64,000 nucleotides of DNA, from positions 62,001 to 126,000 of the IMG/VR virus record IMGVR_UViG_3300036846_000743; one strand, given 5' to 3'. Numbering within the stretch: position 1 is the first letter of the stretch; each line of letters starts with the position of its first letter. Positions 3,352-64,000 of this stretch are shown here, one piece after another. A program made the position numbers and the translations under genes. The notes beneath the pieces are model-generated. The model was not told where the DNA came from. It did not search any database and saw nothing but the letters and a program-made list of their open reading frames with translations.

Positions 3352-3600
3352 TCAGACCGGAACCGCTTTCATCCTAGTGGGCGAGACCAGATGAGTGGCC
3401 CCCAGGAAAACTGCCTCACCGGTCTCCATGTTGATCGCCGCCCGAAAGTCCCATGGCTGATTGCTTTGCGGATCGGCACGGCCCAGATCCGAAGTCAAGT
3501 ACTCGCCGTCCTTCCCTTTCCACCTGGTCCGGAAGGTCTGGCCGGGCGACATCTCGCGGAAGATCTGGTCAGGACCAGCTGTGCCAGGCGTCGTTTTCAT
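3352..3600 (-). CDS. Small hypothetical protein (82 aa)
   Basis: ATGA overlap with the upstream gene stop at 3597-3600. Confidence 0.55.
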   Translation of the reverse strand: MKTTPGTAGPDQIFREMSPGQTFRTRWKGKDGEYLTSDLGRADPQSNQPWDFRAAINMETGEAVFLGATHLVSPTRMKAVPV

Positions 3601-5604: not shown

Positions 5605-7272
5605 CTAGATATCAGGCATGTCGGCGTCAACGACGGAAATGCCGATATTGTGTACATCAAGCATGAAAGCTACGGTGCGAGGCGTGACCATATTACCGGG
5701 CTCGTCGGGAATTTCGAGCACTTCGGTGCTGCGGATCCGCCGCATGGTACCGTCGGGCCGCCGGATGGTCCCGAACATGTCGATGGCTCCGGTATAGGCG
5801 CCATCAGGCAGCTGGTCCTGAACCAGATCGGCAAGTAGACTGGCATAAAGCTGACCGATAAAACCCAGCGAGTTGACCAGCTGCATCATGGAAGCCGCGA
5901 TGGCGTCCACGGTCCCCTGATCGACGACGACCGTGGCCCGCTTGCGGATGTCAAAGCTGATTGCCAGGAAGCAGGGAACCGGGGCCTTGACCAGGCAATC
6001 CCCGGCGGGCGCCCCGAAGGACCGGCCGGAAACAGTATCCTGCAAGTCGGCGATCAGGGGCATGGCCAGTAGCGAGACGGCATAGTCGGCCGTGGACTGG
6101 TTCACGATCAGACTGGCAACCGGCGTGTCAGTATCCAGGAACTGGATCGTCGTGGTCTGATAACGACTGTACGCGGCTTCAATGGGATTCACGATGTCGG
6201 GCACGAAGCCGGGGAAGTCGAGATCGAAGGAGCGGTCGTCGCTGGTGATCTCGTAGCCGGCGTCGTCCTGCGACCCTCCCGCAGGCCCGACCCGGTCGAC
6301 CTGGTAGAAGCCGGGGGCATCGGTCGCGGTGATCGAGAGCTGCCAGATTCCGCCAGCGGCGAGTTTCTGGACCAGTGTAGCTGTCTTCGTGACGGTGATC
6401 GATAGCGGCATGTCCTGGGTGCGGGCATAGAGATCGACGCGGCCGAAATGTGAGATCGGCATGACGGTGTGCCGGTCGCGGAGCATCTCGGGATCGCCAG
6501 CGCCGATGATCGAAGTCTGGAGGATCCGGGAGAACTGGTCCATGGCCCTGAGCGAGGCGTCGATCGTGACCCGGTTCGACCAGGCGCGGGCCGCCATGCC
6601 TCCCTGGAGCCGGTTGAGCATCTCCTGGTTGCTCTCGGGGTCGAAGCCGCCGCTGAAGTCGCTCTCGGCGTATGCCCGGTCGAAGTAAGGGATCGGATCG
6701 GTCATGGCCAGGGAGGCTCCCCGGCGGAGCATGCCAGCCGCGCCGGGATCGTCGGCGGTCACCGGGATCGAGAACGAGTAGGTGCCGTCACCTACCGGGC
6801 GGAGCACGCGGTCCGTATCCGTGGTAGCCGTGGCATCGCTGATCCGCGCCGCATAGGCTTGGCCGGGGGTGAACGTGATGCCCCCGGACACGAACTGGGC
6901 TGCCGCCGGCACGACCACCGGAGCCAGGGTGGTAAGAACGATGGTGATCGTGCCGGTCGCGTTCGATCCGGCACCACGTTCGATCCGGAAGTTGGACAGG
7001 GCCCGGTTGACGATGTCATCGTCGGCCAGGGCGGGGTTCTCGGAGATCGCCATCAAGCTGTTCGAGTCCCGCATCAGCTCCATGCGGGCCCGCTGCTCGG
7101 CGCCCAGGATCGATACCAGGTACAGGACGATGTCGTGAATTACGCCCCGCTTGATCTCCAGTTCGGGGAATTGTTCTGCCATCCGCTCGGAGATCTGCTG
7201 GTGCGCCTGGTCCACGAGGGCAGGATCGATCGTTGACAGGTCGAGCACGTCGAGGATATCGGCCATGGGCAT
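5605..7272 (-). CDS. Baseplate J / gp6-like wedge protein (555 aa)
   Basis: Pattern typical of baseplate J: ELEIKRGVIHDIVLY, RGAGSNATGTITI, PGAAGML, FSGGFDPESNQEMLNRL, GRVDLY; directly after a gp25-like gene. Confidence 0.75.
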   Translation of the reverse strand: MPMADILDVLDLSTIDPALVDQAHQQISERMAEQFPELEIKRGVIHDIVLYLVSILGAEQRARMELMRDSNSLMAISENPALADDDIVNRALSNFRIERGAGSNATGTITIVLTTLAPVVVPAAAQFVSGGITFTPGQAYAARISDATATTDTDRVLRPVGDGTYSFSIPVTADDPGAAGMLRRGASLAMTDPIPYFDRAYAESDFSGGFDPESNQEMLNRLQGGMAARAWSNRVTIDASLRAMDQFSRILQTSIIGAGDPEMLRDRHTVMPISHFGRVDLYARTQDMPLSITVTKTATLVQKLAAGGIWQLSITATDAPGFYQVDRVGPAGGSQDDAGYEITSDDRSFDLDFPGFVPDIVNPIEAAYSRYQTTTIQFLDTDTPVASLIVNQSTADYAVSLLAMPLIADLQDTVSGRSFGAPAGDCLVKAPVPCFLAISFDIRKRATVVVDQGTVDAIAASMMQLVNSLGFIGQLYASLLADLVQDQLPDGAYTGAIDMFGTIRRPDGTMRRIRSTEVLEIPDEPGNMVTPRTVAFMLDVHNIGISVVDADMPDI

Positions 7273-7277
7273 CTCCG

Positions 7278-7754
7278 TCAGATCGGGACCACGCCAGGCG
7301 TGGTCGAGATGGGCATGATCACCTTGCGGCTGGTACCGGCCAGGCTCCGGAGCGTGACATGCATGACAATGGTGCCCGACAGGATGGACACCGAGTCCAG
7401 CGTAGCCAAGGCATACCGCTCATCGTCCGGATCGGTAGCCAGCTCCTCGGCGGTGAGCGACAGCTCGAGATCGTTCAGGGCCAGATTGAAAGCGATGAAA
7501 ACATCGGTCTCGGTACGAAGATAGCCCTGACGAAACTGGATCATGAACGTGGTGCCGCGGCCTGGCAGGTAGAGCATGGAGCCCTTCTCGGTGAGCAGCT
7601 CCAGGACGAACCGCTGGGCCAGCTTCTGGACGCCGGTGCAGAGCTGGCCGGCAGCAGCCTCGGTGAAGAGGATCTGCTCAAGCCGGACCTCGCCCATAGG
7701 CTTGGCCCCCTGAAGCGCCAGAACGTCATAGATTCGCAACTCGCCGTTGCTCAT
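7278..7754 (-). CDS. gp25/GpW-like baseplate wedge initiator (start re-placed to ATG 7754)
   Basis: GVQKLAQRFVLELLTEKGSMLYLPGRGT resembles the gp25/GpW signature; ATGA overlap with the upstream gene at 7751-7754. Confidence 0.7.
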   Translation of the reverse strand: MSNGELRIYDVLALQGAKPMGEVRLEQILFTEAAAGQLCTGVQKLAQRFVLELLTEKGSMLYLPGRGTTFMIQFRQGYLRTETDVFIAFNLALNDLELSLTAEELATDPDDERYALATLDSVSILSGTIVMHVTLRSLAGTSRKVIMPISTTPGVVPI

Positions 7755-8215
7755 CCTTGCCCCGACTGTAATGCATCCTGCACATGCTTGAGCACGCCAC
7801 CCAGGAAGACGCCTGCGTCGTAGGAATGACCGAACCGCCGGCCCATCGCGTGAGCGATGCACCGGACCGGTGTGGCGTGCCTGGCACGGAAGGCACGCTC
7901 CATGATCGCGATATAGTCGCCCTGGGTCTTGACCGAGATCACGTCGCCGCAGGTCCCAGGATCGGTACCATCCTGGATCAGCTCGGCGTAATTGGTATCG
8001 ATGTTCTCGCGGTCAAAGCCAGCCGTGATGCCGGCGATATCGAGAAGATCCAGCGCCCCCGCATCCTTGTGCTTGGACTGCACGCTGGTCTCAGGGATGT
8101 TCCATTTGCGGGGCCCATAGCCGCGAGATGCTTTACCCTGCTGACCATCCTGCGTGGTCAGGTCCTTGAGATTGTTCGTGAAGACATCGTCGATCTTGCC
8201 CTTGCTCGCCATCAT
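7751..8215 (-). CDS. Hypothetical protein (154 aa)
   Basis: Translationally coupled on both sides (ATGA). Confidence 0.6.
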   Translation of the reverse strand: MMASKGKIDDVFTNNLKDLTTQDGQQGKASRGYGPRKWNIPETSVQSKHKDAGALDLLDIAGITAGFDRENIDTNYAELIQDGTDPGTCGDVISVKTQGDYIAIMERAFRARHATPVRCIAHAMGRRFGHSYDAGVFLGGVLKHVQDALQSGQG

Positions 8216-9003
8216 AGCACCTCCGAGTCCTCGAGTTCGTTCAGCATCCGCTGGATCCGCGCCGCCCGCTGGCTGACGGCCCCCGGCGAGATCCGCAGCC
8301 GGCGAGCGATCTGGGTGGCCGGCAGCTTGGGAGCACCGTTTAAGCCCATGCCGTACTCTAAGATCACCTGGTCATGCGGGTCGAGGTCATGATAGAGAAA
8401 CTGAGCCCTGAGCATAGATCGATCAGGCCCTTCGACGGCCGGCTCGAACCCGCCACCGCCACTCCCTTCTTCATCCTCATCGGACAGAGCGGCCATCCGG
8501 CCTTCAGGTATTGCCGGCCGGTAGCCCCTGATGTGTGCGATGCGTCGCCGGGACAGCCCTATGTGATCTGACAGCTCCATGTCCGACGGATCACGGCCCA
8601 GCTGATCACGCAGCTCGGTCTCGGACTCGGTCAGGTGCTGTTGATCAAGCGCCACCGCTTCAGGAACCTTGATCGTCTGTGCCTGCTGCGCACTGTAGCG
8701 GCGCAGCCCCTGAAGGTGGGCCATCAGGTGGGTCTTGAGGCTGGCCTTGGTCGGGTCATACTTCTTGGCCGCATCCAGGGCAATCATCCGCGCGCGGCTG
8801 CGCATCATAGGGTTGACGTTCCGGCCGCCGTAGACAGAAAGCCCTTCATCGATCACCGGATTGATCGCTTTCAGGAACTCGTCGGACTGGCCGGGACCGG
8901 GATTGGCTGACCACGCATGAAAGGCGGGAGCGTACTGTGACTCGAGCCGGTCCTTGGGCGCGGCGAAGCCGGGCTCGAGCTTGTACGGGGTGAAACCAGG
9001 CAT
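8212..9003 (-). CDS. Phage sigma70-family RNA polymerase sigma factor (263 aa)
   Basis: Region 2-like AAKKYDPTKASLKTHL, region 3 LGRDPSDMELSDHIGLS, region 4 HTH LDPHDQVILEYGMGLNGAPKLPATQIARRLRISPGAVSQRAARIQRML. Confidence 0.88.
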   Translation of the reverse strand: MPGFTPYKLEPGFAAPKDRLESQYAPAFHAWSANPGPGQSDEFLKAINPVIDEGLSVYGGRNVNPMMRSRARMIALDAAKKYDPTKASLKTHLMAHLQGLRRYSAQQAQTIKVPEAVALDQQHLTESETELRDQLGRDPSDMELSDHIGLSRRRIAHIRGYRPAIPEGRMAALSDEDEEGSGGGGFEPAVEGPDRSMLRAQFLYHDLDPHDQVILEYGMGLNGAPKLPATQIARRLRISPGAVSQRAARIQRMLNELEDSEVL

Positions 9004-54388: not shown

Positions 54389-56365
54389 TCAACTGCCGCC
54401 ACGCCAGGTAGCAGCGCCTCCGTGGACCGGCATTTTGAGTCGGTCCACTGATGCATCATGACCATCCAGGTCGTCGTTGTCGACATCCCAGGATCCGTCG
54501 TCAGGATCCCAACCCTTGGTCAGGCCCTGCCGCCCGAAGTGAGTGCGCTCGGCCAGCGCGGGCACGTAGCTCGTACCGGCAACGTCACTGGTAGCGCCCC
54601 GATGCGCCGCCTGCAACGTGGCCTTCTCAAGGCCGGACCCCAGATGCCGGGTCATGAAGTCGGGATCATGCTGGAGGTTGTACATGCCCCGGACCATCAT
54701 GGGTTCGAAGGGCGGCGGCTCGTCATGGACTTCCAGATTGTTCACTCCGAACTCCCTGAGTTCGGGAAGCATCCCCTGGCGGACCTTGGTGCCTATGGTG
54801 TGATGCAGGACCGGACGCTCGAGATACTTGCCCACAGCCGATGGCAGCTCGACCACACGGGACCCTTCCCGGGGACGCCAGTTGTTCTCGACGTGTGAGT
54901 ACGGCACCACGTCATCCTCCACGTGATCACCGAATTCGTCCGTGACCCGAACGTGATCGATCAGGCCGCGGGCCAGCAACTCGACATTGCGCCGGTGGCT
55001 GCTCATGCCCGAGTTACGATAGGCGTCTCCGAATGCCCCGACGAAATACCGGCGGCCCTCGCCAATGCCTTTGTGCCGAACGACTTCGGCAGGGTTGGGT
55101 ATCCCGTCCGAGAGCACGTCGCCAGCCTCGACACTATCGCCGATCTCGACCTTCGGGTCCATACCGGCGGGGACGTAGTGCTGCTCGGATCCGACCATGA
55201 CGTACTTGCCGCCCTGGGGAGCGTCAGTGATCGCCGAGACCTTGCCGTCGAGCTGAGCATGCGTGGCCCCGCCCTTGAAGGTCTTGGGCACCTGAATTAA
55301 CTGGTTGATATGGGCAAACCCAGAGACGGCTTTGTCGGCCCCGGCGACGCCGCCGGTATGCCGGGCCGAAAGCTGGCCCTGGGAGAGCTTCTCCGAAACG
55401 GCCTGCGCAGCAGCCAGGCCCACGTAGTCGCCCAGCGGGGGTAAACCGCCCCGCTCCCGGATGCCGACATCCCGGGCATAGACGCCTCCCTGGGGCGGCC
55501 CGCCAATCATGGGCGATCGGACCAGGATACGACCATGCCCCTGAGCCTGGAGGTCCTTGAGGACCTTGGGCGTCAGGGTCGTATTTCGCTTGTAGGGGCC
55601 GATGGGGCGAGCCAGCAGGGCACCTTCGTTATCGGGATCATCGGTCGCGACTGGCAGGCCGCGCACCGAGGTCGTATCGTCAGGGCCGTCGTGATCGGTC
55701 ACGATCAGACGGTGCACGACCTGGTTGAGCTGCTTGCTCAGGAAGCCAGCGTCCTGGGTGGCAAACTTGGTCGAGACAACGCCCTTGCGAGCACCGAAGG
55801 CACCGGCCCAGTACTCGGCAGGCGAAAGACCATGAGGGTACGAGTTCAGGACAGGGATCGGGATCGGCCGGTCGTGATGATCGACGTACATCAGGTCGGA
55901 GCCCATGAAAGACTTCAGGTTCGTCTTGCTGCCCCGCGCGCCTGAGAGCACCTGGCGGACAAACGGATTGTCAGCCGCCTTGGCCTCGTCGAAGATCGCG
56001 TTCTCCATGTGATCACGGTACTTGTCCACCGCGGCAACGATCGCCTGCTCTTTTTGGTCGTCAGTTGTCCGGGTGTTGGCCTGGATCATCTGGACTTCGC
56101 GGCGAATCTGTTCCTTGATCCGCTCGCCAGTCTTGCTGGGCCGCATGTCTTCCAGAGCGACCGAGAAGCCGCCGGTGGAATATGCTACATCACGACCAAC
56201 GTCAGAAAGCCGCTTGGCAACGTCGCGGTAGATCTCGGGGCGGCGCTCGGCGATGTCCTGGAAAAGTTGCCTGATACCTTTGGCGTCGAGAACGCGATTG
56301 TAGTCTTTGAGTTCAGGCGGTAAACTTTCGTTCACCATCAAATTCCCTAGAGTTGTCCGGAGCAT
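54389..56365 (-). CDS. rpoC: RNA polymerase beta' subunit, C-terminal part
   Basis: SGARG; bridge helix EYWAGAFGARKGVVSTKFATQDAGFLSKQL; trigger loop AAQAVSEKLSQGQLSARHTGG; RRNVELLARGL. Start 56365 (or 56392). Confidence 0.92.
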   Translation of the reverse strand: MLRTTLGNLMVNESLPPELKDYNRVLDAKGIRQLFQDIAERRPEIYRDVAKRLSDVGRDVAYSTGGFSVALEDMRPSKTGERIKEQIRREVQMIQANTRTTDDQKEQAIVAAVDKYRDHMENAIFDEAKAADNPFVRQVLSGARGSKTNLKSFMGSDLMYVDHHDRPIPIPVLNSYPHGLSPAEYWAGAFGARKGVVSTKFATQDAGFLSKQLNQVVHRLIVTDHDGPDDTTSVRGLPVATDDPDNEGALLARPIGPYKRNTTLTPKVLKDLQAQGHGRILVRSPMIGGPPQGGVYARDVGIRERGGLPPLGDYVGLAAAQAVSEKLSQGQLSARHTGGVAGADKAVSGFAHINQLIQVPKTFKGGATHAQLDGKVSAITDAPQGGKYVMVGSEQHYVPAGMDPKVEIGDSVEAGDVLSDGIPNPAEVVRHKGIGEGRRYFVGAFGDAYRNSGMSSHRRNVELLARGLIDHVRVTDEFGDHVEDDVVPYSHVENNWRPREGSRVVELPSAVGKYLERPVLHHTIGTKVRQGMLPELREFGVNNLEVHDEPPPFEPMMVRGMYNLQHDPDFMTRHLGSGLEKATLQAAHRGATSDVAGTSYVPALAERTHFGRQGLTKGWDPDDGSWDVDNDDLDGHDASVDRLKMPVHGGAATWRGGS

Positions 56366-56401
56366 GGCAACGTCACACCCCCGCTTCACCATACGCTTTC
56401 G

Positions 56402-56656
56402 TCAGACTTGCCAGTCGTAGTCCTTGACGCCGTTAGGCTTGATCGTGTCGATCTGGACCCGGTCGAGGCCGAGATTGGCCAGGATGCGGTTGAAGTGCGG
56501 GTCCCTGGCGTGCGCCGCCGTGACATGCGTTCCGTTGGTATCGCCCACCCATTCCACGACCACGGCCAGCGGGGTCCCGTCACCGCTCTTGACGACCACG
56601 CGGGTGGCCGGGATCACCAGCGGATTGCCCAGGCCGTCGAGGATCTCCAGGATCAT
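56402..56656 (-). CDS. Hypothetical protein (84 aa)
   Basis: ATGA-coupled to the upstream gene. Confidence 0.65.
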   Translation of the reverse strand: MILEILDGLGNPLVIPATRVVVKSGDGTPLAVVVEWVGDTNGTHVTAAHARDPHFNRILANLGLDRVQIDTIKPNGVKDYDWQV

Positions 56657-57456
56657 GCATCACCACTTTTGAGCGATCGGGACAGGGCAGCCAGGGCGCC
56701 CGCCTTGCTGCGAACCGTACGTAATTCATCGAGCGTGTACTCATTACCGACATCGAACGACTGGCGGCGATGATCCTCGCCGAGAATTCTGGAGATCCCT
56801 TGAACACCCGAACCCGCTCTGACCGAGGCCGCCTTGGCGCCGCCGCCAATGGGGCCCTGGTCGGGAGTCAGCGGCGGAATTGGGCCAGGACCAGCCCCGC
56901 CACCCGGAGGCGCACCGCCGCCCGGAGGCGCGCCGCCGCCCGGAGGCATACCGCCTGGTCCCGGCATGGTGGTACCACCACCGCCAGGTGCTGCCTGCTC
57001 CGCCTGTGCCTGTTGCTGCATCATCGGATCAGGCGGCGGACCGACCACGATCGATGGCGGCACCTGGACGTTCAGGGCCTCGCAGACCTTCACGAGCAGG
57101 AACTGGATCGTCCAGAGCTTGGTGTCCAGTAATTGCTGCTCGGCCTTCTTGCCGCCACCCTTGCCAGCAGGCCCGCCGGCCATGCCGCCGGCGCCTTGAG
57201 CTGCCTGGGTGATCTGGGCCAGCGTCGCCGGATCGAGCGGTCCTGGAGGCGGAGCTGGTGCTCCACCCATAGCACCGCCCCCGCCGGCCATCGCGGCTGG
57301 ATCCGGCATGGGCGGCGGAGCGCCGCCAGCCATTGCGCCCGGATCAGGGGGCTGCGCGACCTTCTCGAACTCGTTGTTGTCCAGTACGTCGTTGTCGACC
57401 CGCCATCGTGCTACTGCCCGCAGGTGTGGATTGATGAGCGGAAGTGTCGCTGACAT
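56653..57456 (-). CDS. Pro/Gly/Ala-rich hypothetical protein (267 aa)
   Basis: Low-complexity PPGGG repeats; EKVAQ and AKAAS motifs. Confidence 0.65.
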   Translation of the reverse strand: MSATLPLINPHLRAVARWRVDNDVLDNNEFEKVAQPPDPGAMAGGAPPPMPDPAAMAGGGGAMGGAPAPPPGPLDPATLAQITQAAQGAGGMAGGPAGKGGGKKAEQQLLDTKLWTIQFLLVKVCEALNVQVPPSIVVGPPPDPMMQQQAQAEQAAPGGGGTTMPGPGGMPPGGGAPPGGGAPPGGGAGPGPIPPLTPDQGPIGGGAKAASVRAGSGVQGISRILGEDHRRQSFDVGNEYTLDELRTVRSKAGALAALSRSLKSGDA

Positions 57457-57648
57457 GGTTCACCGTCCCTGATGAGTGGGTTCCCGGTCCCTGAGTCGAC
57501 AGCCGGCTTCACGCCGTCATCTTAACGCGAGTCAGCCTTCCCGAGCAACGCAGCGGCTAAAGTTCGCCGCTGTTCCCGTCATATACCAATGCAAGACGCC
57601 TGGTTGTCAGGCATCCCGATCTGTCCATCACGATGAAAGGGTTTTCTG

Positions 57649-57747
57649 ATGGGAACTGTTCTGTTCTGGCTCTTCGTGCTCTTTTGTCTTGCAGCCGCAG
57701 GACGTAGCGCTTGCAGCTGTACCAATCACTATCACTACCGGAGGTGA
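57649..57747 (+). CDS. Possible 32-aa hydrophobic peptide MGTVLFWLFVLFCLAAAGRSACSCTNHYHYRR (antisense to the operon)
   Basis: GAAAGG upstream; one TM/signal-like segment; followed by hairpins and a U-tract on the + strand. Confidence 0.4.
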   Translation: MGTVLFWLFVLFCLAAAGRSACSCTNHYHYRR

Positions 57748-57756
57748 TCGACCCGC

Positions 57757-57821
57757 CGGAAAGCTAACCCACCCTAGCTTTCCGATGGGTCGGAAGACCC
57801 GTCGGACTGTCTTTTCTTTTT
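57757..57821 (+). terminator. Two adjacent hairpins followed by a T-rich tract (intrinsic terminator-like on +)
   Basis: CGGAAAGCTA-8nt-TAGCTTTCCG (57757-57784) overlaps TCCGATGGGTC-GGAA-GACCCGTCGGA (57781-57806); then CTGTCTTTTCTTTTT. Confidence 0.6.
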
Positions 57822-57826
57822 AGCTA

Positions 57827-59815
57827 TCAGCGATCCATAACGATCTCGACGGGCTGATCTGCGCTAATATCACCCCGCCGGTAAGCCGCCAGGGCATCGG
57901 CCTTGGTAGCGAAAGTCCGCGGTCGCTTACCGGACCGTCCGGCCGTGGCCGCGTAGAGCCCGGCGGCGTATTCGCGGCTCGGAAGTTGATGCGCTTTGAA
58001 AGATGCTGCCGCAAGCAGGTTCCGGCTGGGAAGCATCTTCTCATAAGCGTCCCTGACCGCTTCCTTGGTAACCGGGACGTGGTACTGCATGGCGTCGCCA
58101 TCGAAGTCAGCGCCGAAGCCGGTGACGATCATGGGCGACACGTGCAGGGTCTCGCCCTGCTCGAGCCTCGGGCGGAAAGCCATGATCCCGTACCGGTGCA
58201 GGACTGGTGCTCTGTTGATGATCACCGGCCGGGAGTCCATCTCGTGCATCATCTCGGCGCGCGCCGACGGCTTACGCTCCTTGACCGCCCTGACGGCATC
58301 GATACGAGCCATGCCGCGCTGAACTAACCGGCGAACGATAAAAGGCTGGTAGACATCCCAGGCCCGGTTCTCCGGCAGGCCGACCTGATCCATGTCCAGA
58401 TCGGGATTGGGCACTATAGTCGCTCGACCCACCAGGTCCGTGGCGCTGGAGAGCAGCTTGCGCTGGACCATGCCCGTCTTGGGGCTATTCCCGAAAACCT
58501 GCTTGAGCACGCCCCGGACCCCTCGCTCCTGGTTCTTGGGATGAAGCGGATCACCGAGGCCAGTCACAGCCTTCAGGGTCTGGTAAGCAGCCAGCCGCTC
58601 CTCCGAGACGTCGTTGACCTTGGTCTTCATGTCCCGGAGGTTATCACGAGCATCGATCAGTTCTTTGTAAAGATAATTGGCATCAGCCACCATGGGCAGC
58701 TTGGAGCCAGCCATCGTCGAGACCGGCCGGAACATAGGGGGCAGCACAGGGGCTTTATCGAGCATCCAGTCCCTGGGATGCAGCCCGGCTTTCTGGGCAC
58801 CCTTCAGGTAGCCCAGCTTGCGCACGGCCGTATCACGGGCACCCTTACGTCCTGAGCGAATATCAGCTCGGGCCTGGTTGATGGCCTGATCGAGCTTGAT
58901 CCCATCCAGCGCCTTCGAGATCGCTTCGGAGCCCGTCCGGCCATTGAGTTCCTCCTTGCCGGACAGCACGGACAGGAACTTCTTCTCGGTCATGCCCAGC
59001 ATCCGCCGGATCGGTTCTTCCATCGCTGGGTTGGGTAAGGGCTCGGCCAGCTTAATATGCGCCCACCTGTTTCCCCCGTGACCACCGGTCAAGGCTTCGT
59101 CGAACAAGCCTCCTTTCAGGGGCTTCAGGCCCTCTTTCCAGTCGACCGTGTCGCCGTGGGTGATCTCGCGGTCGCCAGATAATTCATCGACATCTTTCCC
59201 TGAAAGAGCCATCGCATTCAGCCTGGTACCTTGGCGGACGACGTTAATTCCGCCGGCCTTGAGCATGTTGATGAACTTGTCATAGACCATGGGCGTCTTG
59301 GGCGTCGGCAGCGGCCGGCCGGACATGAACTGCGCCCAGAATTCGGGATGCTGCTGGCCCCGAACGGCACCAGCATCACGAAGCACTTCGGTAGCTCCAT
59401 GCGAGAGCAGCGCGTTCACGTCCATGAGTGATATTCTCTTGGAGCCGGCTTCGCCGCCACGTGCTGGGGCCCCCTCGGCCGTGTAGCCGCCGGTGCCGCG
59501 GCCCTGGCCCTTGGATTCGCTGGTGTGGTGAAGTTTCATGAACCAGCGGTTGCCCGTAAGTATGCGCGGGATATCGCGCCCGGCGACCGGATCCTTGATC
59601 GTCTCGGCCGATGTCATGCCATGCCGGGCCAGCTCCTGGATGGCCCATTCGTTGTAGTCCCGGCCGTCGAAGTCAGGAACACGATAGGGCCTGCCGGTCT
59701 TCTCGGCAATCTTGCCCAGAGCGGCCTCGATGCTCTGGGCCGGGTTCGTGCGGGTGATCACACCTAAAGGATTCAACAATACTTCATACGGCCGACCTTT
59801 CATATCTTGTGGCAT
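57827..59815 (-). CDS. rpoC: Fused RNA polymerase beta C-terminus + beta' N-terminal (catalytic) part; conserved coding extends upstream to 59857 without a start codon
   Basis: beta: MPQD...VLLNPLGVITRTNPAQ, MKLHH...KGQGR, KRISLMDVNALLSHGA. beta': GGLFD, VLPPMFRP, DLVGRATIVPNPDLDMDQVGLP, NRAPVLHR, GADFDGD at 58094-58114. Confidence 0.93.
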   Translation of the reverse strand: MPQDMKGRPYEVLLNPLGVITRTNPAQSIEAALGKIAEKTGRPYRVPDFDGRDYNEWAIQELARHGMTSAETIKDPVAGRDIPRILTGNRWFMKLHHTSESKGQGRGTGGYTAEGAPARGGEAGSKRISLMDVNALLSHGATEVLRDAGAVRGQQHPEFWAQFMSGRPLPTPKTPMVYDKFINMLKAGGINVVRQGTRLNAMALSGKDVDELSGDREITHGDTVDWKEGLKPLKGGLFDEALTGGHGGNRWAHIKLAEPLPNPAMEEPIRRMLGMTEKKFLSVLSGKEELNGRTGSEAISKALDGIKLDQAINQARADIRSGRKGARDTAVRKLGYLKGAQKAGLHPRDWMLDKAPVLPPMFRPVSTMAGSKLPMVADANYLYKELIDARDNLRDMKTKVNDVSEERLAAYQTLKAVTGLGDPLHPKNQERGVRGVLKQVFGNSPKTGMVQRKLLSSATDLVGRATIVPNPDLDMDQVGLPENRAWDVYQPFIVRRLVQRGMARIDAVRAVKERKPSARAEMMHEMDSRPVIINRAPVLHRYGIMAFRPRLEQGETLHVSPMIVTGFGADFDGDAMQYHVPVTKEAVRDAYEKMLPSRNLLAAASFKAHQLPSREYAAGLYAATAGRSGKRPRTFATKADALAAYRRGDISADQPVEIVMDR

Positions 59816-59858
59816 CTCATGATCAGGAATGATTGCGGAAACTACGCCTTTATCGCCT

Positions 59859-62800
59859 TCAACCGTACCGGCCGCTGTTCAGCGACCAGTACGTTTTGTC
59901 CTCTCTTTTGCAGTAGACGATATGGTTGGGGACTGTGACGCAGTAAACGTCACCCGAATAGTCGACCATCCTTTCTTCGTTCGCCTCGTAGATCCCGATC
60001 CGGCCATGTTTGAACCAAGGACGCAAATGCTTCCGATTGACACGACCCCGCCAATGCGGCTGTTTCTGCCAGTTATCCGTCCGCTCCGTCCGTTTGAGCG
60101 TCACGGCCCAGCCTAGTTTCAAGCAAATGATCTGGATATCGACAGCTAGCTGTTCAGACGAAGAACCGTATTCCCATGCATCGCCTTGATGACCATCGCC
60201 GGCCATGTAAGCGTCAAAGAAAATGCGGAGCTGCCGCGGGCACAACTCCTGAACGTAGTCTGGAATGTACTTGGTATAGCTATCGCCTAACAGCGCCAGA
60301 ACCCCGTAGAGCCATTTGCTGGTAATCTCGAACCGCTGATCGTCGCTATTGTAGGTGAAACGAATCCCTAGCCGAACTAGGCTATCGTAGATCGCTTGCC
60401 AGTGCGGTGAGTTACGGAACTGGGCAATCTTCACCTTGAAGCTACCATTGGCCTTATTGTAGTCGCACCAACCTTCAGCCAAGTAATAGCCCAGAAACTC
60501 GAGCCAGTCGTCCATTCGGACCTGCTCATAATACTGCTCGCGCGATGTGTATTGCGCGTATGGCTCGAACTTGATCCATTCTTGCTCGATGCCAATCCAG
60601 CGGCAGTCTTTCTTGAAATTCCATTCGCCTTTCGACTCGTAAAATGCCTGTGCCGTGATCGGCTGATAGGACTTGCCTGGCCGTGCTACCCAGAGTCGGT
60701 GCTCGGGCGTGACCAGCATGTTGATGTGCTTGGTGTTCAGGTAGTACATCAATCCATCATGACGATACCGATGCAGATGAGTCGGCTGCTGATATTCCAG
60801 CGCATCCGTCTCAGGGTTGAGAGTTGTCAGCTCGTCATCGGTCACAACCTCCGCAACCGGTTTCCAACCCCGACGGGTCAGAAGCCAGGTCGCCGGGTCG
60901 TAGCACATCTTGTCGCCGACTTCCATGGGGTTCAGGCTCTTGACCGAGACCACGATACCCTTGGGCGTCTTCTCGACGTCGGTAACTTCGCCAGGTGCAT
61001 GATGGTTCCAGGTCTCAGAGTGATCGGCCCACGCCGCTTGCCGGCCCCGGGAGAGCGACCCGTGGGTCCGCTCGCGTTCCTTGACGGCCAGGATCAGCGG
61101 ATCGCCGTGATTGACGATCGTGCCCGGCCTGACCACGCCCTCGTCGTCAATGGTATCAAGCATCTTGCGGTCGAATACACCTGGAAAAGTCGCGATGTGG
61201 GCGCTCTTGCCCGGCTTGACCTCGCCGTCGTGCTCGAGCGAGTGCTGATACATGTGCTCCGAGGAGAACCGCTTGGCCATCGCCTCGCTGATGACGATCG
61301 CGTCCTCGAAGTTCAGGCCGCGGAAGGGGATGTAGGCCGTGCGGGCGTTCTGACCCAGGGCCGATACACCGTGTTCGTCGGTGTAGTTGGACCTGGCCAG
61401 CAGGCTGCCGGCAGCGATCCGGTCGCCAGGCTTGACTACCGGAGTCTGGTGAATATAGGTTTTCCGGTTGTAAGGATAGTTCACGTAAAGCTCGTGCTCG
61501 CGGGGCTTGCCGTCGTCGCCCTGGACGGTGATCTTGCCGTCCTCCACCCTGGTGACGATACCGGGAGCGTCACTGTGCATGGCGCCGAAATGCCGGCCAT
61601 AGCGGGACTCGTAACTGTCACCCTGGCTCCCCCTGACGCCGGCCTGCACCAGCGGGGCCTGGGGATCCTTCACCGGCAGGGCCTGGGTGATCATGCGGCC
61701 GGCCATGACCTCACGCTGCCCCTTGACGGTCGACTTCATCGGCACCAGGTTCGAGATCGAGCTGAAGGCATCGTCCATGTTGGGCAGCTCGTACTGGACC
61801 TGGTTCCGCGGCACGTCGCGGGTCTTGCCGCCGGCCAGCGCCGAGACGTAGGGCTTGACCGTCTGTAGCTCGCCCGGAAAGGCAATCACCGAGTCGGTCA
61901 GGTCCTGCGCGCTGCGGTGTTCGAGCCGGCCAGTACGCACGTTGCGAAACGGCGCGTAGAGCCGGCCGTCGGCCCCCTTGAATGTCCCCTGGGCCACACG
62001 GCCGTCGACACCGGCATGAAAGCTCTCCGGGGTGACCAGGGGATCGATCAGGCCGAAGTGCGACGGCTGAACGTTGCGAGCTTCGGCGGGGATTGCATCA
62101 AGCGAAGGAATCCCTCCAGTGCCCAGCCGGCTGACCCGGGCCTGCTGGTCGAAGATCATGGCCGGGTTAATTCCCTCGGTGGGCTGGCCCAGGCCGCTGG
62201 ACTGGATAGCGGCGTTGATATTCCGGGTCAGTAACTCGGCCGGGATGTGCTTGAGGCTCCCGGTCATGGACGCTTTCCAGAGGACCTTGCCCAGAAGCAT
62301 GCGGTCCTTGCCGACCCGCTCGGATAACAGATCTTCGGGACCCATGGCGTACATGTAGGCCAGGTGATCACGGTCATCGGGTTCTGCTTCTTGTTTGTTT
62401 ATCGCAGCCAGTTTCCTGGTGGTATCCAGCATCTGATCCAGCGAGACCTTGTCGTACGGCTTACCGAGGGTCCGCCTGGTGACCTCTGGGTCGAGCTTCA
62501 TGGCCTCGAACGCTTCGCGGACTTCCTGCTCCTGGGTCTTGGTCGGATCAGGTTTGCGAACCAACCGGCTATGCAGCTTACCGATGACCGATGGATCATC
62601 CTTGAGCATGTTGGGCTGGTAGAGATCACCCCAGGCTTCGCGAAGCTGCTTGTCGCTGGCCCCCATGGCATGGAGCAAGGACGTCAAGGGCATCTTGGAC
62701 TGACCGACTTTGAGGCGGAACACGCCGGTCTCGGGCTCCATGAAGATCCGGTGCGCGGCACCCTGGCCGGGCATGACGTTCACATGGGCTTCGAGTTCGC

Positions 62801-63329
62801 CGTTGGCCTGGCGGCGAGTAAAGACGCCGGGCCGGAGCCTGAGCTGGTGAGCCAGCGTATATTCGGACCCATTCTGGATAAAAGTCCCGTGATCGGTCAG
62901 GTACGGGATCGTAGCCACGGTGGATCGTTTCTGATCGATGACCGCGCCGGTCGCGTTATCACGCAGCGTCCAGGTGCCCCGGAGCCGGGCCCCCAGACTG
63001 CGGCCTCCCAGGATGGCCTTCTTCCAGTCGGCCTTGCCGTACCGCTGCGCGCCTTCATAGCCGACGTCGTCAAGGGTCAGGGTGTGTCGCTGGTTCGAGA
63101 CCGGCGGGATCTTGCCAGCTGCCTCCTTGACGCGATCGAAGATCCGGCTCCGGATCGCGGCCGCATCGCCAAAGGCACGAAGGCCGGCCGGAGCGTGTGC
63201 CGGCAAGGCGGGTGATCGCTCAACACCCTGTTCCTTGTGCGTGCCGTCGTTGATCCTGCCGTCGCCGTCACCGTCTCGCGGGACGCTGGACAGCGATCCC
63301 AGGGCCGACTCTGCCAGAACGCTAGGCAC
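59859..63329 (-). CDS. rpoB: RNA polymerase beta subunit, N-terminal/major part, intein-containing
   Basis: GTFIQNGSEY...LRPGVF, SRLGTGG...ARNVQPSHFGLIDPLVTPE, MAGRMITQA, LGQNARTAYIPFRGLNFEDAIVISE, VGDKM. GTG 63329 with AAGGAGG. Confidence 0.93.
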   Translation of the reverse strand: MPSVLAESALGSLSSVPRDGDGDGRINDGTHKEQGVERSPALPAHAPAGLRAFGDAAAIRSRIFDRVKEAAGKIPPVSNQRHTLTLDDVGYEGAQRYGKADWKKAILGGRSLGARLRGTWTLRDNATGAVIDQKRSTVATIPYLTDHGTFIQNGSEYTLAHQLRLRPGVFTRRQANGELEAHVNVMPGQGAAHRIFMEPETGVFRLKVGQSKMPLTSLLHAMGASDKQLREAWGDLYQPNMLKDDPSVIGKLHSRLVRKPDPTKTQEQEVREAFEAMKLDPEVTRRTLGKPYDKVSLDQMLDTTRKLAAINKQEAEPDDRDHLAYMYAMGPEDLLSERVGKDRMLLGKVLWKASMTGSLKHIPAELLTRNINAAIQSSGLGQPTEGINPAMIFDQQARVSRLGTGGIPSLDAIPAEARNVQPSHFGLIDPLVTPESFHAGVDGRVAQGTFKGADGRLYAPFRNVRTGRLEHRSAQDLTDSVIAFPGELQTVKPYVSALAGGKTRDVPRNQVQYELPNMDDAFSSISNLVPMKSTVKGQREVMAGRMITQALPVKDPQAPLVQAGVRGSQGDSYESRYGRHFGAMHSDAPGIVTRVEDGKITVQGDDGKPREHELYVNYPYNRKTYIHQTPVVKPGDRIAAGSLLARSNYTDEHGVSALGQNARTAYIPFRGLNFEDAIVISEAMAKRFSSEHMYQHSLEHDGEVKPGKSAHIATFPGVFDRKMLDTIDDEGVVRPGTIVNHGDPLILAVKERERTHGSLSRGRQAAWADHSETWNHHAPGEVTDVEKTPKGIVVSVKSLNPMEVGDKMCYDPATWLLTRRGWKPVAEVVTDDELTTLNPETDALEYQQPTHLHRYRHDGLMYYLNTKHINMLVTPEHRLWVARPGKSYQPITAQAFYESKGEWNFKKDCRWIGIEQEWIKFEPYAQYTSREQYYEQVRMDDWLEFLGYYLAEGWCDYNKANGSFKVKIAQFRNSPHWQAIYDSLVRLGIRFTYNSDDQRFEITSKWLYGVLALLGDSYTKYIPDYVQELCPRQLRIFFDAYMAGDGHQGDAWEYGSSSEQLAVDIQIICLKLGWAVTLKRTERTDNWQKQPHWRGRVNRKHLRPWFKHGRIGIYEANEERMVDYSGDVYCVTVPNHIVYCKREDKTYWSLNSGRYG
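59877..60905 (-). mobile_element. Intein with LAGLIDADG homing endonuclease (343 aa) at GDKM|S of beta
   Basis: Block A CYDPATWLLTRRGW; block B LVTPEHRLWV; LAGLIDADG FLGYYLAEG and FFDAYMAGDG; block F/G VYCVTVPNH...WSLN followed by +1 Ser; lower GC. Confidence 0.95.
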
Positions 63330-63339
63330 AGGGCCCTCC

Positions 63340-64000
63340 TTACTTGGGGTGCGGCTGTACCAGTTGCTGTCCAGCGACGCGGCCCAGCGATCCAGCCAGG
63401 CTGGGTAATTGCGGCGGGGACGGCTCTGCCGGCTTCTCGGGCTTCGCCGGCTTGCCATCGGTCGGCGTCATGAGCCGGTTCCAGACGGCCATCTGATTGG
63501 CCTTGATCCGGTTCAGGAATTGGTCGGCCGCCTGGCCGACACTGGCGTGCTTCTCTTTCTTCGCCGGCTCCTCGTCTGGTTCCTTCCTGGCCCCGAACGC
63601 ACGGTGCCAGATCGACGGCTTCGGCCGCATGATCGGTGTCGGCATCGGGATCGCCATGATCGGGCTCGGGGCCTGCTCGGCAATCTGGGCCTGCCGCCGC
63701 TTCACTGCCTCCTCGACGGCCTTGTCCTCGGCCGTTGATCTGGCCCAGTGATAACCACCCAGGCCGGCACCCAGCATGAGGCCGCCGCCCAGCGTCAGGG
63801 CACCACCCATAAGCGGACCGTACCAGCCTTCTGCCTGCTTCTCGTAGAGACTGGCCAGCACATCGAGCGAGCTGGGCTTCGGATCTGCCGAAGCCAGCTT
63901 GCGCCGGCCGGCCAGCGCACTCTCGTAGCCCTTGCGCGCCTCTTCCAGCTCACTCTCCTGCTCGGCCGTCCGGGTCTTGTCGAGCAGATAGTCAGTCAGC
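63340..64000 (-). CDS. Glycine-zipper hypothetical protein, 5'-truncated by window edge
   Basis: The track ORF 63340..63861 stays open upstream to base 64000 (LTDYLLDKTRTAEQ...); MGGALTLGGGLMLGAGLGGY; EKQAE and EKHAS motifs. Confidence 0.7.
   Translation of the reverse strand, partial: LTDYLLDKTRTAEQESELEEARKGYESALAGRRKLASADPKPSSLDVLASLYEKQAEGWYGPLMGGALTLGGGLMLGAGLGGYHWARSTAEDKAVEEAVKRRQAQIAEQAPSPIMAIPMPTPIMRPKPSIWHRAFGARKEPDEEPAKKEKHASVGQAADQFLNRIKANQMAVWNRLMTPTDGKPAKPEKPAEPSPPQLPSLAGSLGRVAGQQLVQPHPK

What the first reader, a model, noticed from the sequence alone, without database searches (positions are those of the whole stretch)
54389..63329. Phage multisubunit RNA polymerase with an unusual partition: betaN | betaC-beta'N fusion | beta'C
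Seen: the beta C-terminal motifs run without a stop into beta' N-terminal motifs around 59250-59212 (FINMLKAGGINV...RLNAMALSGKD) in one ORF, while beta' C lies two genes downstream. Known: cellular beta-beta' fusions (Helicobacter, Wolbachia) join full-length chains, and phiKZ-type phage RNAPs split beta and beta' into separate pieces. Inference: here the cuts fall across subunit boundaries. If the hop at 59862 is real, the product is a full beta-beta'N polyprotein plus a separate beta'C. The enzyme looks closer to cellular RNAP than phiKZ enzymes do.
Basis: partly seen in the sequence, partly recalled or inferred. Interest (0 to 1): 0.85.

Follow-up and report, generated by a model that had tools for sequence, protein, structure and literature searches.

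The report
Phage RNA polymerase: fusion, intein, hop
This jumbo-phage RNA polymerase is a two-chain enzyme (beta fused to the first half of beta', plus the rest of beta'); the apparent third piece arises because the fused gene holds a mobile intein followed by a 7-base stop-containing gap that ribosomes most likely hop over, a rare and apparently undescribed kind of natural translational bypass.

Summary
About 60 of 80 related IMG/VR phages, and Salmonella phage Arash (gp206, found in virions by mass spectrometry), carry beta and beta'N as one ORF of about 1,470-1,525 aa, with beta'C separate. So beta-beta'N plus beta'C is a family ground plan, already in GenBank but not discussed in the papers I read.

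In the window the fused gene (63329..57827, minus strand) carries a 343-aa LAGLIDADG intein between the two active-site lysines. Five codons later comes a 7-nt insert, GGT-TGA-A-GGC.

I inspected DNA from twelve lineages with this intein. They hold nine different inserts of 5-10 nt, covering all three frames and all three stop codons. Each is GGY-stop...GGY followed by GAY-AAR. Each is preceded by a 12-15 bp hairpin with compensatory substitutions. Gap-less alleles of the same intein lack the strong hairpin.

A hop of peptidyl-tRNA-Gly from GGY to GGY restores the invariant motif SGRYG|DKGVV. No experiment supports this yet.

The enzyme matches bacterial RNAP better than AR9 RNAP. A sigma-like gene lies at 8212..9003. 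No alpha or omega homologue was found in the window.

The parts
60906..63329 (-). N-extein: beta subunit, N-terminal 808 aa, up to ...VGDKM (GTG start with TAAGGAGG Shine-Dalgarno)
   Evidence: Pfam Rpb2_3 and Rpb2_6 profile 5-228. Start codon and SD. Coordinates. GDKM aligns with E. coli beta ...D-K1065-M1066, by extension from the aligned G1071-N-K1073.
59877..60905 (-). 343-aa intein with a LAGLIDADG homing endonuclease (Cys1 ... Asn343, followed by Ser+1)
   Evidence: LAGLIDADG_3 at 24.3 bits, above the 22.5 cut-off. T-x-x-H block and terminal Asn invariant in 13 homologous inteins. AF2 model pLDDT 88.5. Foldseek top hits are TliVMA, PhoVMA, PI-PfuI and PI-SceI inteins, E 2e-17 to 1e-8.
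59864..59893 (-). 13-bp RNA hairpin (CGUACUGGUCGCU-GAAC-AGCGGCCGGUACG). Its 5' arm is the intein's last codons and its 3' arm is the extein codons SGRY. Its last base is the first base of the take-off codon.
   Evidence: RNAfold z = -4.4. Present in all 12 gap-bearing lineages. 98.6% of cells paired, 5 of 13 pairs with compensatory double changes, 0 of 500 shuffles as high. Weak or absent in gap-less alleles and in intein-less genes.
59862..59876 (-). First five C-extein codons, S-G-R-Y-G, ending in the take-off codon GGT (59864-59862)
   Evidence: Direct reading. Matches the family consensus SGRYG.
59855..59861 (-). 7-nt insert: TGA stop (59861-59859), A (59858) and the landing codon GGC (59857-59855)
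   Evidence: Absent from 74 uninterrupted homologous sites. Nine variants of 5-10 nt in 12 lineages, all GGY-stop...GGY.
57827..59854 (-). Rest of the fused gene: 675 codons from GAT (D of DKGVV) through the beta C-terminus and beta' N-terminal half (GADFDGD) to TGA at 57829-57827
   Evidence: Pfam. PDB alignments to beta and beta'. One continuous ORF with the N part in about 60 relatives.
56653..57456 (-). Conserved 267-aa Pro/Gly/Ala-rich protein between beta-beta'N and beta'C; function unknown
   Evidence: A roughly 240-aa ORF sits at this position across the clade. No Pfam or PHROG hit.
56402..56656 (-). Conserved 84-aa protein, start overlapping the previous stop (ATGA); function unknown
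   Evidence: Synteny in about 30 loci. AF2 pLDDT 88, five strands plus one helix. No structural match, best E 0.63.
54389..56392 (-). beta'C subunit (667 aa from ATG 56392; homology begins near Met10 at 56365)
   Evidence: Pfam Rpb1_4, Rpb1_5 and RPOC_hybrid. Aligns to Streptomyces beta' 655-1177. Homologous to Arash gp216.
8212..9003 (-).
   Evidence: tblastn with Arash gp10, a virion-associated 'sigma factor': E 2e-10. Weak Sigma70_r3 and r4 hits, below Pfam cut-offs.

Best explanation
The locus encodes a two-chain RNA polymerase core of an Arash-like jumbo-phage family. One chain is beta fused through its C-terminus to the N-terminal half of beta' (about 1,488 aa when mature). The other is beta'C (about 660 aa), cut near E. 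coli beta' residues 550-580.

In this phage the fused gene has been invaded by a mobile cassette with three parts:
1. A LAGLIDADG intein inserted between the two active-site lysines of beta.
2. A 13-bp mRNA hairpin spanning the intein/extein junction.
3. A 7-nt insert (TGA-A-GGC) directly after the Gly codon five codons into the C-extein.

Proposed mechanism (inferred, not shown):
- The ribosome stalls with peptidyl-tRNA-Gly on GGU and UGA in the A site.
- Refolding of the hairpin behind the ribosome pulls the mRNA through.
- The tRNA re-pairs with GGC 7 nt downstream, and decoding resumes at GAU.
- The result is an 1,831-aa precursor reading ...SGRYG|DKGVV.
- The intein then splices itself out.

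By homology with Arash, the enzyme is probably packaged in virions and works with a phage sigma-like factor.
For: Architecture:
- beta-beta'N is a single ORF of 1,458-1,499 aa in about 60 of 80 relatives.
- Arash gp206 is 1,525 aa with Rpb2 and Rpb1_1/2 domains, and gp216 has Rpb1_4/5. Both are abundant in Arash virions; gp206 has 100% coverage and 128 unique peptides (PMC10585845).
- The beta gene of Vibrio phage D181 is interrupted by a group I intron exactly at the break (RF00028, 100.7 bits).

Hop:
- The family consensus is GDK[ML]SGRYGDKGV, and 74 sites are uninterrupted.
- Of 41 protein clusters of this intein lineage, 36 end exactly at ...N(S/C)G(R/Q)YG.
- Twelve lineages carry nine different inserts of 5-10 nt, using UGA, UAA and UAG and all three frames. 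All are GGY-stop...GGY-GAY-AAR.
- The five gap-less clusters run straight on from the Gly into DK (SGRYG|DKGVV in two of them).
- Synonymous sites are frozen just 5' of the gap: 9 of 11 codons identical against 36 of 202 elsewhere, p = 1.6e-5.
- The hairpin shows covariation. It is present in 12 of 12 gap carriers at -18 to -26 kcal/mol and weak in 3 of 3 gap-less alleles at -4 to -11.5 kcal/mol.
- ORFs on both sides stay intact across about 50% amino-acid divergence.

Intein.
Against: - There is no protein, ribosome-profiling or read-level evidence for any member carrying the gap.
- Known hops over stop codons without dedicated signals are inefficient (about 1%, from my knowledge of the Weiss/Atkins work cited), whereas in Arash this protein is very abundant.
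- The hairpin's role is inferred by analogy with T4 gene 60.
- A product with one extra Gly, or with an x-G insertion, cannot be excluded from sequence alone.
- The intein has Leu rather than His before the terminal Asn, so its splicing competence is untested.
- Virion packaging and sigma dependence are extrapolated from a homologue with 25-33% identity.
Confidence: 0.68

Rival explanations
1. This is a true three-chain enzyme. Translation ends at TGA 59861-59859, giving betaN (after intein splicing). A separate betaC-beta'N chain starts at ATG 59815.
For: These are the ORFs as called, and gene callers split the gene this way in 36 protein clusters. Split beta subunits exist in phiKZ/AR9-type enzymes (PMC7824862).
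Against: - The 45 nt between the gap and ATG 59815 encode GDKGVVSAIIPDHE in ORF2's frame with no start codon. This stretch matches E. coli GNK1073GVISKINPIED and includes an active-site lysine. That chain would lack it.
- The break is absent from 74 homologous sites.
- The invariant GGY...GGY flanks and the covarying hairpin have no role in this model.
Confidence: 0.07
2. A different recoding event is used at each allele. In the window this would be a +1 frameshift at GGU-UGA-A, giving SGRYG-EG-DKG. In the 6- and 9-nt alleles it would be stop read-through, and in the 5- and 8-nt alleles a -1 or +2 shift. Each would add two or three residues.
For: A stop in the A site is a classic +1 stimulator (the prfB type, from general knowledge). 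All such products would share an x...G insertion before DKG.
Against: - It needs three mechanisms for one conserved cassette.
- tRNA-Gly re-pairing from GGU to GUU is poor.
- It inserts residues into an invariant catalytic loop that has no length variation in 74 relatives.
- It gives no reason for the landing codon always being GGY.
- Gap-less alleles of the same intein read straight on from the Gly into DK.
Confidence: 0.13
3. The 7-nt insert is a sequencing or assembly artefact, or the gene is a decaying pseudogene.
For: The window is a metagenome-assembled contig, and I could not check the reads. The first exact-match scan of metagenome contigs found nothing.
Against: - Analogous inserts occur in JGI, ENA, NCBI and Logan assemblies from many samples: 36 protein clusters, of which I inspected DNA for 12 lineages.
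- One allele is identical in four contigs.
- Both flanking ORFs are intact over more than 1,800 codons at about 50% divergence.
- There is hairpin covariation and synonymous constraint.
Confidence: 0.04
4. The hairpin-plus-stop element is mainly regulatory. Most ribosomes terminate, releasing betaN-intein (a source of free homing endonuclease). Only a small fraction hop, which throttles RNAP synthesis or favours intein spread.
For: - The cassette is mobile. Carriers are not one clade (AU p = 4e-7), and the inteins are more alike (60-64%) than the host genes (50-52%).
- There is a precedent in T4, where the gene 60 bypass travels with the mobA endonuclease (the mobA link is described in preprint 10.1101/2022.08.31.505936; the mobile-cassette reading is Bonocora et al. 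2011, from its title and my own knowledge).
Against: This is compatible with the main explanation and differs only in efficiency and purpose. No data bear on efficiency. The RNAP homologue is highly abundant in Arash virions, but Arash has no gap.
Confidence: 0.08

Closest known systems
Salmonella phage Arash RNAP (gp206 + gp216; OQ632216.1) and Vibrio phages D181/D148/D69
   Same: Same ground plan: beta fused to beta'N (Arash gp206, 1,525 aa) plus a separate beta'C (gp216, 606 aa). The match is colinear over the whole fusion. In Arash both proteins are in virions, together with a sigma-like gp10 that has a homologue in the window.
   Different: Only 25-33% identity. Arash has no intein and no gap, and its beta'C lies 4.8 kb away behind opposite-strand genes. 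D181's beta is interrupted by a group I intron with a homing endonuclease gene rather than by an intein. The published description does not note the fusion or the split.
T4 gene 60 translational bypass and its mobA cassette
   Same: Gly take-off codon followed by a stop. Matched Gly landing codon. mRNA structure next to the take-off site. Linkage to a homing endonuclease and horizontal mobility. One protein is made from two ORFs (for this locus).
   Different: No sequence homology, and a different host gene. The gap is 5-10 nt rather than 50 (20 in one clade). The structure is a hairpin entirely 5' of the take-off codon rather than one containing it. The endonuclease sits inside an intein. No nascent-peptide signal has been identified. 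Nothing has been tested experimentally.
mReC: multimeric-RNAP-encoding Caudovirales (Weinheimer & Aylward 2020, PMC7481178)
   Same: Tailed phages, some jumbo, whose beta and beta' are close enough to cellular enzymes to match COG0085/COG0086. They are far less diverged than phiKZ-type enzymes.
   Different: mReC contigs list separate beta (about 1,011-1,377 aa) and beta' (about 976-1,004 aa) genes. The paper applies 'fused' and 'fusion' only to crAssphage and does not use 'split'. I did not test whether this family falls inside mReC.
phiKZ / AR9 virion and non-virion multisubunit RNAPs
   Same: Phage-encoded two-barrel RNAP. beta' is split into N and C polypeptides. No alpha or omega. One enzyme is packaged in the virion (PMC7824862 and PMC13282480).
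   Different: Those enzymes split beta as well (4-5 polypeptides), never fuse beta to beta', and are much more diverged. AR9 chain 7s00_C scores E 3e-7 against 4e-20 for bacterial beta. I did not compare the split points.
Cellular beta-beta' fusions (Helicobacter, Wolbachia rpoBC) and the cyanobacterial/plastid gamma + beta' split
   Same: The beta C-terminus is joined directly to the beta' N-terminus. beta' is cut between the catalytic NADFDGD region and the trigger-loop half.
   Different: Cellular fusions keep beta' whole. Among relatives only L072, L076 and L080 (2,038-2,082 aa) do this, confirmed by Pfam for L072. The phage cut lies about 70 residues upstream of the cyanobacterial one: ORF2 residue 651 aligns to residue 551 of the 625-aa gamma subunit. 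The Helicobacter and Wolbachia facts come from my own knowledge and were not tested here.
Inteins in second-largest RNAP subunits (RPB2/RPA2/RPC2 and viral RPO; Goodwin et al. 2006, PMC1635734)
   Same: Inteins with LAGLIDADG endonucleases inserted at the most conserved, active-site-proximal positions of the beta-like subunit.
   Different: Those are in eukaryotic nuclear genes and eukaryotic viruses, at other sites. None is reported with an adjacent bypass. Here at least eight insertion positions are used across the phage family.

Membership tests
Multisubunit (two-barrel) RNA polymerase, beta and beta' homologues | beta double-psi barrel with the two conserved lysines (GDK...; G-x-K-G) | tested here: met
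   The sequence reads VGDKM ... SGRYG|DKGVV. DKG aligns with E. coli N1072-K1073-G. Rpb2_6 matches on both sides of the intein.
Multisubunit (two-barrel) RNA polymerase, beta and beta' homologues | beta' catalytic aspartate triad (NADFDGD) | tested here: met
   GADFDGD starts near residue 568 of ORF2, with all three Asp present and the first residue Gly instead of Asn.
Multisubunit (two-barrel) RNA polymerase, beta and beta' homologues | alpha dimer and omega assembly subunits (bacterial core) | tested here: not met
   None of the 35 larger window ORFs scanned gave a Pfam alpha or omega hit. The conserved 84-aa neighbour has no structural match. Small ORFs and the other 160 kb of the genome were not scanned.
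beta-beta' fusion (Helicobacter type) | one ORF across the beta C-terminus and the beta' N-terminus | tested here: met
   The join is conserved in every related locus I examined.
beta-beta' fusion (Helicobacter type) | the whole of beta' is included in the fused chain | tested here: not met
   The chain stops near E. coli beta' residue 550, and beta'C is a separate gene 1.4 kb downstream. The feature is met only in the distant relatives L072, L076 and L080 (Pfam for L072).
phiKZ/AR9-type split RNAP | beta encoded as separate N and C polypeptides | tested here: not met
   The break is a 7-nt insert inside an otherwise continuous gene, and the family norm is one ORF.
phiKZ/AR9-type split RNAP | beta' encoded as separate N and C polypeptides | tested here: met
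   Whether the split point is the same was not tested.
Intein with homing endonuclease | Cys/Ser1, block B T-x-x-H, C-terminal Asn, and a nucleophile at +1 | tested here: met
   Cys1 and ...SLN|S. Thr65, His68 and Asn342 are invariant in 13 inteins (numbering of alignment A2, which omits Cys1).
Intein with homing endonuclease | penultimate His (block G H-N) | tested here: not met
   The residue is Leu here. In relatives it is Gln, Gly, His or Met. Inteins without this His are known to splice (my own knowledge, not tested).
Intein with homing endonuclease | HINT fold plus LAGLIDADG domain | tested here: met
   AF2 pLDDT 88.5. Foldseek probability 1.00 to the TliVMA, PI-PfuI and PI-SceI inteins. 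Pfam LAGLIDADG_3 is above its cut-off.
Intein with homing endonuclease | protein splicing activity | not testable with these tools
   This needs expression of the precursor.
Programmed translational bypassing (hopping) | matched take-off and landing codons read by one tRNA | tested here: met
   GGY to GGY in 12 of 12 lineages with 9 different gaps.
Programmed translational bypassing (hopping) | slow-to-decode or stop codon immediately 3' of the take-off codon | tested here: met
   UGA, UAA or UAG in all 12 lineages.
Programmed translational bypassing (hopping) | conserved cis-acting mRNA signal | tested here: met
   The hairpin has 5 compensatory pairs with 0 of 500 shuffles as high. Synonymous constraint gives p = 1.6e-5. 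The hairpin is absent from gap-less alleles. Its causal role is inferred.
Programmed translational bypassing (hopping) | a single polypeptide is actually made across the gap | not testable with these tools
   This needs mass spectrometry or a reporter assay.
T4 gene 60 / mobA cassette | homology to the gene 60 bypass cassette (topoisomerase gene, roughly 50-nt gap, take-off stem-loop, MobA) | tested here: not met
   The host gene, gap length, structure position and endonuclease family are all different.

The most novel reading that the evidence does not exclude
The intein, the junction-spanning hairpin and the 5-10-nt stop-containing gap form one mobile cassette. It would be a second, independently evolved class of programmed translational bypassing in phages, widespread in nature (at least 36 protein clusters). 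In it, refolding of a hairpin behind the ribosome drives peptidyl-tRNA-Gly over a stop codon efficiently enough to make an essential, abundant virion RNA polymerase in hosts of very different base composition.
Probability: 0.5. Interest if true: 0.9.

Novelty: new variant of a known kind. Interest (0 to 1): 0.78.

Why it matters
1. The case corrects how a whole family of jumbo-phage RNA polymerases should be read. They are two-chain enzymes (beta-beta'N plus beta'C, with full beta-beta' fusions in distant members). This intermediate between cellular and phiKZ-type layouts is already in databases but mis-annotated as 'beta' and 'beta''. The covalent beta-beta' link may replace alpha-mediated assembly.

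2. Natural programmed bypassing is known essentially from T4 gene 60 and its relatives, and from one yeast mitochondrial lineage. A short-gap cassette with dozens of natural variants differing in gap length, stop codon and hairpin sequence would be a ready-made mutational series for testing how mRNA refolding drives take-off and landing.

3. Gene callers split these genes. In 36 protein clusters the protein ends artificially at ...SGRYG, so annotation pipelines and RNAP phylogenies are affected.

4. It is a second example of a bypass element travelling with a homing endonuclease. This raises the question of what the gap does for the selfish element.

Tried and rejected
- **Megablast to GenBank phages:** no match for the locus.
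- **Exact-match scan of metagenome contigs:** none found for the window's junction. A degenerate pattern then found relatives.
- **The search for related loci with the intein alone:** returned only the window's own contig.
- **Group I intron at the break:** rejected for the window, which has no Rfam hit. This is the explanation in Vibrio phage D181.
- **Stop-codon reassignment or a suppressor tRNA:** rejected because all three stop codons and all three frames occur, and the window has no tRNA genes.
- **Reinitiation after the stop:** rejected because there is no in-frame ATG, GTG or TTG before the conserved DKG.
- **Split intein or trans-splicing:** rejected because the break lies five codons after a complete intein.
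- **The 84-aa and 267-aa proteins as omega- or alpha-like subunits:** no support.
- **PHROGs and Pfam on about 35 neighbouring ORFs:** almost all unannotatable. The exceptions are Baseplate_J, Laminin_G_3 and a glycosyltransferase.
- **Host assignment from genome bins:** inconclusive. The related contigs sit in bins labelled Aquaspirillum, Thermoguttaceae and others.
- **Not attempted:** a full RNAP phylogeny against cellular, mReC and phiKZ enzymes, for lack of a broad reference set. I relied on E-value contrasts instead.

Full report
**1. What is in the window**

On the minus strand between 63,458 and 54,389 lie five ORFs of 1,199, 662, 267, 84 and 667 aa.
- The first ORF has Rpb2 domain 3 and the first two-thirds of Rpb2 domain 6 (profile 5-228), then a LAGLIDADG hit.
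- The second starts with the last third of Rpb2_6 (profile 246-361). It runs on without a stop into Rpb1 domains 1 and 2, including GADFDGD.
- The fifth has Rpb1 domains 4 and 5.

Alignment to solved structures shows the following.
- The start of ORF2's frame matches bacterial beta from G-N-K1073 to the C-terminus.
- Residues 270-658 of ORF2 match beta' up to about E. coli residue 550.
- The fifth ORF matches the rest of beta', Streptomyces residues 655-1177.

The quoted peptides sit at 59,275 and 59,224-59,192.

**2. The 'beta N' ORF ends in an intein**

After ...VGDKM the ORF continues with 343 residues that begin with Cys and end ...WSLN, followed by Ser.
- They include a T-x-x-H block and two LAGLIDADG motifs.
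- On its own the segment passes Pfam's LAGLIDADG_3 cut-off.
- An AlphaFold model built from 13 homologous inteins has pLDDT 88.5.
- Its best structural matches are endonuclease-containing inteins (TliVMA, PhoVMA, PI-PfuI, PI-SceI), with E from 2e-17 to 1e-8.

Extending the alignment places the intein between E. coli beta M1066 and A1067, that is, between the two catalytic lysines K1065 and K1073.

**3. The beta N | beta C break is a 7-nt insert**

The window is IMG/VR contig IMGVR_UViG_3300036846_000743, 226 kb.
- In about 60 of 80 related IMG/VR loci, beta and beta'N are one ORF of 1,458-1,499 aa.
- At the position of the break these loci read GDK[ML]-SGRYG-DKGV. Across all loci I counted 74 uninterrupted sites.
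- The window reads ...AAC|AGC GGC CGG TAC GGT TGA A GGC GAT AAA GGC.... This is the same sequence with 7 extra nucleotides that contain an in-frame stop and shift the frame by +1.
- Downstream of the insert, ORF2's frame codes for GDKGVVSAIIPDHE before its first ATG. This matches E. coli GNKGVISKINPIED, and no start codon is available.

A three-chain enzyme would therefore lack an active-site lysine.

**4. Comparative evidence that the insert is bypassed**

*How widespread the gap is.* A protein search with the intein region found 41 clusters (under 90% identity to each other) of this intein lineage, from JGI, ENA, NCBI and Logan assemblies.
- Thirty-six clusters end exactly at ...N(S/C)G(R/Q)YG.
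- Five run on without a gap, straight from the Gly into DK; two of them read ...NSGRYGDKGVV.

*The gap variants.* I inspected DNA for twelve gap-bearing lineages. They hold nine different inserts: TAGGT, TGAGGT, TGAAGGC, TGAGGGT, TAATAGGT, TGAATGGT, TGAATGGC, TAACTAGGC and TGAACTAGGC.
- Lengths of 5 to 10 nt cover all three frames, and all three stop codons are used.
- Three things never change. The codon before the insert is GGY. A stop follows it directly. The insert ends in GGY, followed by GAY-AAR (Asp-Lys).

*What explains every allele.* One mechanism does: peptidyl-tRNA-Gly leaves GGY and re-pairs with the downstream GGY, giving SGRYG|DKGVV, the invariant family motif. Read-through, +1 frameshifting or -1 frameshifting would each explain only some alleles, and each would insert residues into a catalytic loop that never varies in length.

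**5. A conserved RNA signal**

- The 14 codons before the gap have almost no synonymous change among four lineages whose inteins are only 58-72% identical. Nine of 11 codons are identical, against 36 of 202 elsewhere (Fisher p = 1.6e-5).
- They fold into a 12-15 bp hairpin that ends one base into the take-off codon. Its 5' arm is the intein's last codons and its 3' arm is the extein codons S-G-R-Y.
- On the 12-sequence alignment, 98.6% of cells form standard pairs and 5 of 13 pairs show compensatory double changes. Examples are Trp UGG to Leu CUG paired with Arg CGG to AGG, and Ser AGC to UCU or Cys UGC paired with matching intein changes.
- None of 500 shuffles reached these values, and slid registers gave 20-58% pairing.
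- Hairpin energies are -18 to -26 kcal/mol in all 12 gap carriers. They are -4.2, -4.7 and -11.5 kcal/mol in three gap-less alleles of the same intein.
- Intein-less genes, and a different intein at the same site (L070), show no unusual folding, with z from -0.6 to +0.8.

By analogy with T4 gene 60, where pairing of mRNA leaving the ribosome is proposed to drive forward movement (title and abstract of 10.1101/2024.12.09.627546, seen), I infer a sequence of events. With a stop in the A site, refolding of this hairpin pulls the mRNA through until the tRNA captures the next GGY. This step is inference, and no experiment exists.

**6. The cassette is mobile**

- In a tree of the N-extein (72 sequences), the window groups with L004 and L005 at 80-81% identity. 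Both lack this intein.
- The other carriers in the tree (L058, L089, L090) lie in a different clade.
- Monophyly of the carriers is rejected (AU p = 4e-7).
- Their inteins are more alike (60-64%) than their host genes (50-52%).

The intein, hairpin and gap therefore appear to spread together. This recalls the T4 mobA/gene 60 cassette, but there is no homology, and a 2022 survey of gene 60 relatives stated that no other phage bypass had been reported.

**7. The real RNAP architecture and how new it is**

After the hop and splicing, the product is beta-beta'N of 808 + 5 + 675 = 1,488 aa, plus beta'C.

The same ground plan is seen in the following.
- More than 70 IMG/VR relatives.
- Salmonella phage Arash. 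Its gp206 is 1,525 aa with Rpb2 and Rpb1_1/2 domains, and its gp216 is 606 aa with Rpb1_4/5 domains.
- Vibrio phages D181, D148 and D69. In D181 the apparent beta split is a group I intron with a homing endonuclease gene.

Three distant relatives (L072, L076, L080) encode the whole of beta-beta' as one chain of 2,038-2,082 aa, confirmed by Pfam for L072.

In Arash both chains are among the most abundant virion proteins, and a sigma-like gp10 is also present (PMC10585845). That paper calls them simply beta and beta'.

The literature I read does not describe this layout.
- Two jumbo-phage reviews and the mReC paper do not mention a beta-beta'N fusion.
- mReC phages have separate beta and beta' genes of about 1,000-1,400 aa.

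So the partition is not unique to this window, but it has gone unremarked.

The beta' cut lies about 70 residues upstream of the cyanobacterial gamma/beta' cut. The enzyme matches bacterial beta and beta' (E 4e-20 and 1e-51) better than AR9 nvRNAP (3e-7). It also matches PHROG families of full-length beta and beta' (about 1,200-residue profiles) at E 8e-41 and 4e-53, against 1e-5 to 1e-13 for the PHROG families named 'RNA polymerase beta subunit'.

**8. Surroundings**

- Between beta-beta'N and beta'C lie a Pro/Gly/Ala-rich protein of about 240 aa and a protein of about 80 aa, in most of the clade's loci. Neither has a family match.
- The 84-aa protein models confidently (pLDDT 88) as five strands and one helix but matches nothing solved. 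No alpha or omega homologue was found among the larger window ORFs.
- The window does encode a homologue of Arash's sigma-like gp10 at 8212..9003 (E 2e-10; weak Sigma70 r3/r4). It sits next to a Baseplate_J gene that matches Arash gp13.
- The RNAP genes therefore sit in or next to a virion module, consistent with a packaged enzyme. This is inferred from Arash.

**9. Limits**

- No reads, proteomics or expression data exist for any gap-bearing phage.
- Bypass efficiency, the exact junction (one Gly or two) and the splicing competence of an intein with Leu-Asn at its end are all unknown.
- The rest of the 226-kb genome was not available, so I could not look for a second polymerase.
- My confidence is about 0.85 for the two-chain architecture and about 0.65 for hopping as the mechanism.

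Noticed in passing
window 8212..9003 (-): A 263-aa ORF is homologous to Arash gp10, the virion-associated 'sigma factor' (tblastn E 2e-10). It has sub-threshold Sigma70_r3/r4 and HTH hits. The adjacent ORF 5605..7272 (Baseplate_J) matches Arash gp13, so this stretch is syntenic with Arash.
   Followed up: partly
related loci L005, L023, L025, L035, L044, L049, L058, L061, L063-L066, L070, L079, L082, L087: The RNAP genes of this phage family are a hot spot for insertions. Homologous LAGLIDADG inteins (26-31% identical, mostly ending G-N) or other inserts occupy at least eight positions in beta, beta'N and beta'C, with up to four per genome in L070.
   Followed up: partly
L002 (Vibrio phage D181, OZ196140.1) 3378-3585 and 7175-7455: There are two group I introns (RF00028, 102.5 and 100.7 bits). 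The second lies exactly at the apparent split of the beta gene and is followed by an annotated homing endonuclease gene. The record annotates the exons as separate hypothetical proteins.
   Followed up: partly
L072:7595-13816, L076:7610-13858, L080:7574-13690: Distant relatives (33-36% identity) encode the whole of beta-beta' as one chain of 2,038-2,082 aa. In L072, Pfam finds Rpb2_3/6 and then Rpb1_1/2/3/5. This is a Helicobacter-like full fusion in phages.
   Followed up: partly
window 56402..57456 (-): Two genes of unknown function sit between beta-beta'N and beta'C in most of the clade's loci. One is a low-complexity protein of about 240 aa with three conserved helical islands. The other is a protein of about 80 aa with a confident but unmatched fold. 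The two are translationally coupled through an ATGA overlap.
   Followed up: partly
window 57457..57826: A 370-nt spacer follows the beta-beta'N stop, where most relatives have 20-30 nt. On the plus strand it holds a short ORF for a hydrophobic peptide (read by eye from the sequence) and a terminator-like hairpin with a T-run at 57781-57806.
   Followed up: no
window about 59000-59090 (-), ORF2 residues about 245-288: The beta' N-terminal zinc-binding element seems to be missing. Between GGLFDEALTG and the next aligned block the phage has 44 residues with no Cys, where Thermus beta' has about 108.
   Followed up: no
P0005, P0015 and locus L104: In some cassette variants the +1 extein nucleophile is Cys (N|CGRYG) instead of Ser. 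The AGC to UGC change is compensated in the opposite hairpin arm (CUG to CAU, Leu to His), so intein chemistry and RNA structure co-vary.
   Followed up: partly
window 63329..63458 (-): The longest ORF starts at ATG 63458 and overlaps the upstream gene by 119 nt. Homology and a perfect Shine-Dalgarno sequence point to GTG 63329 as the real start.
   Followed up: yes
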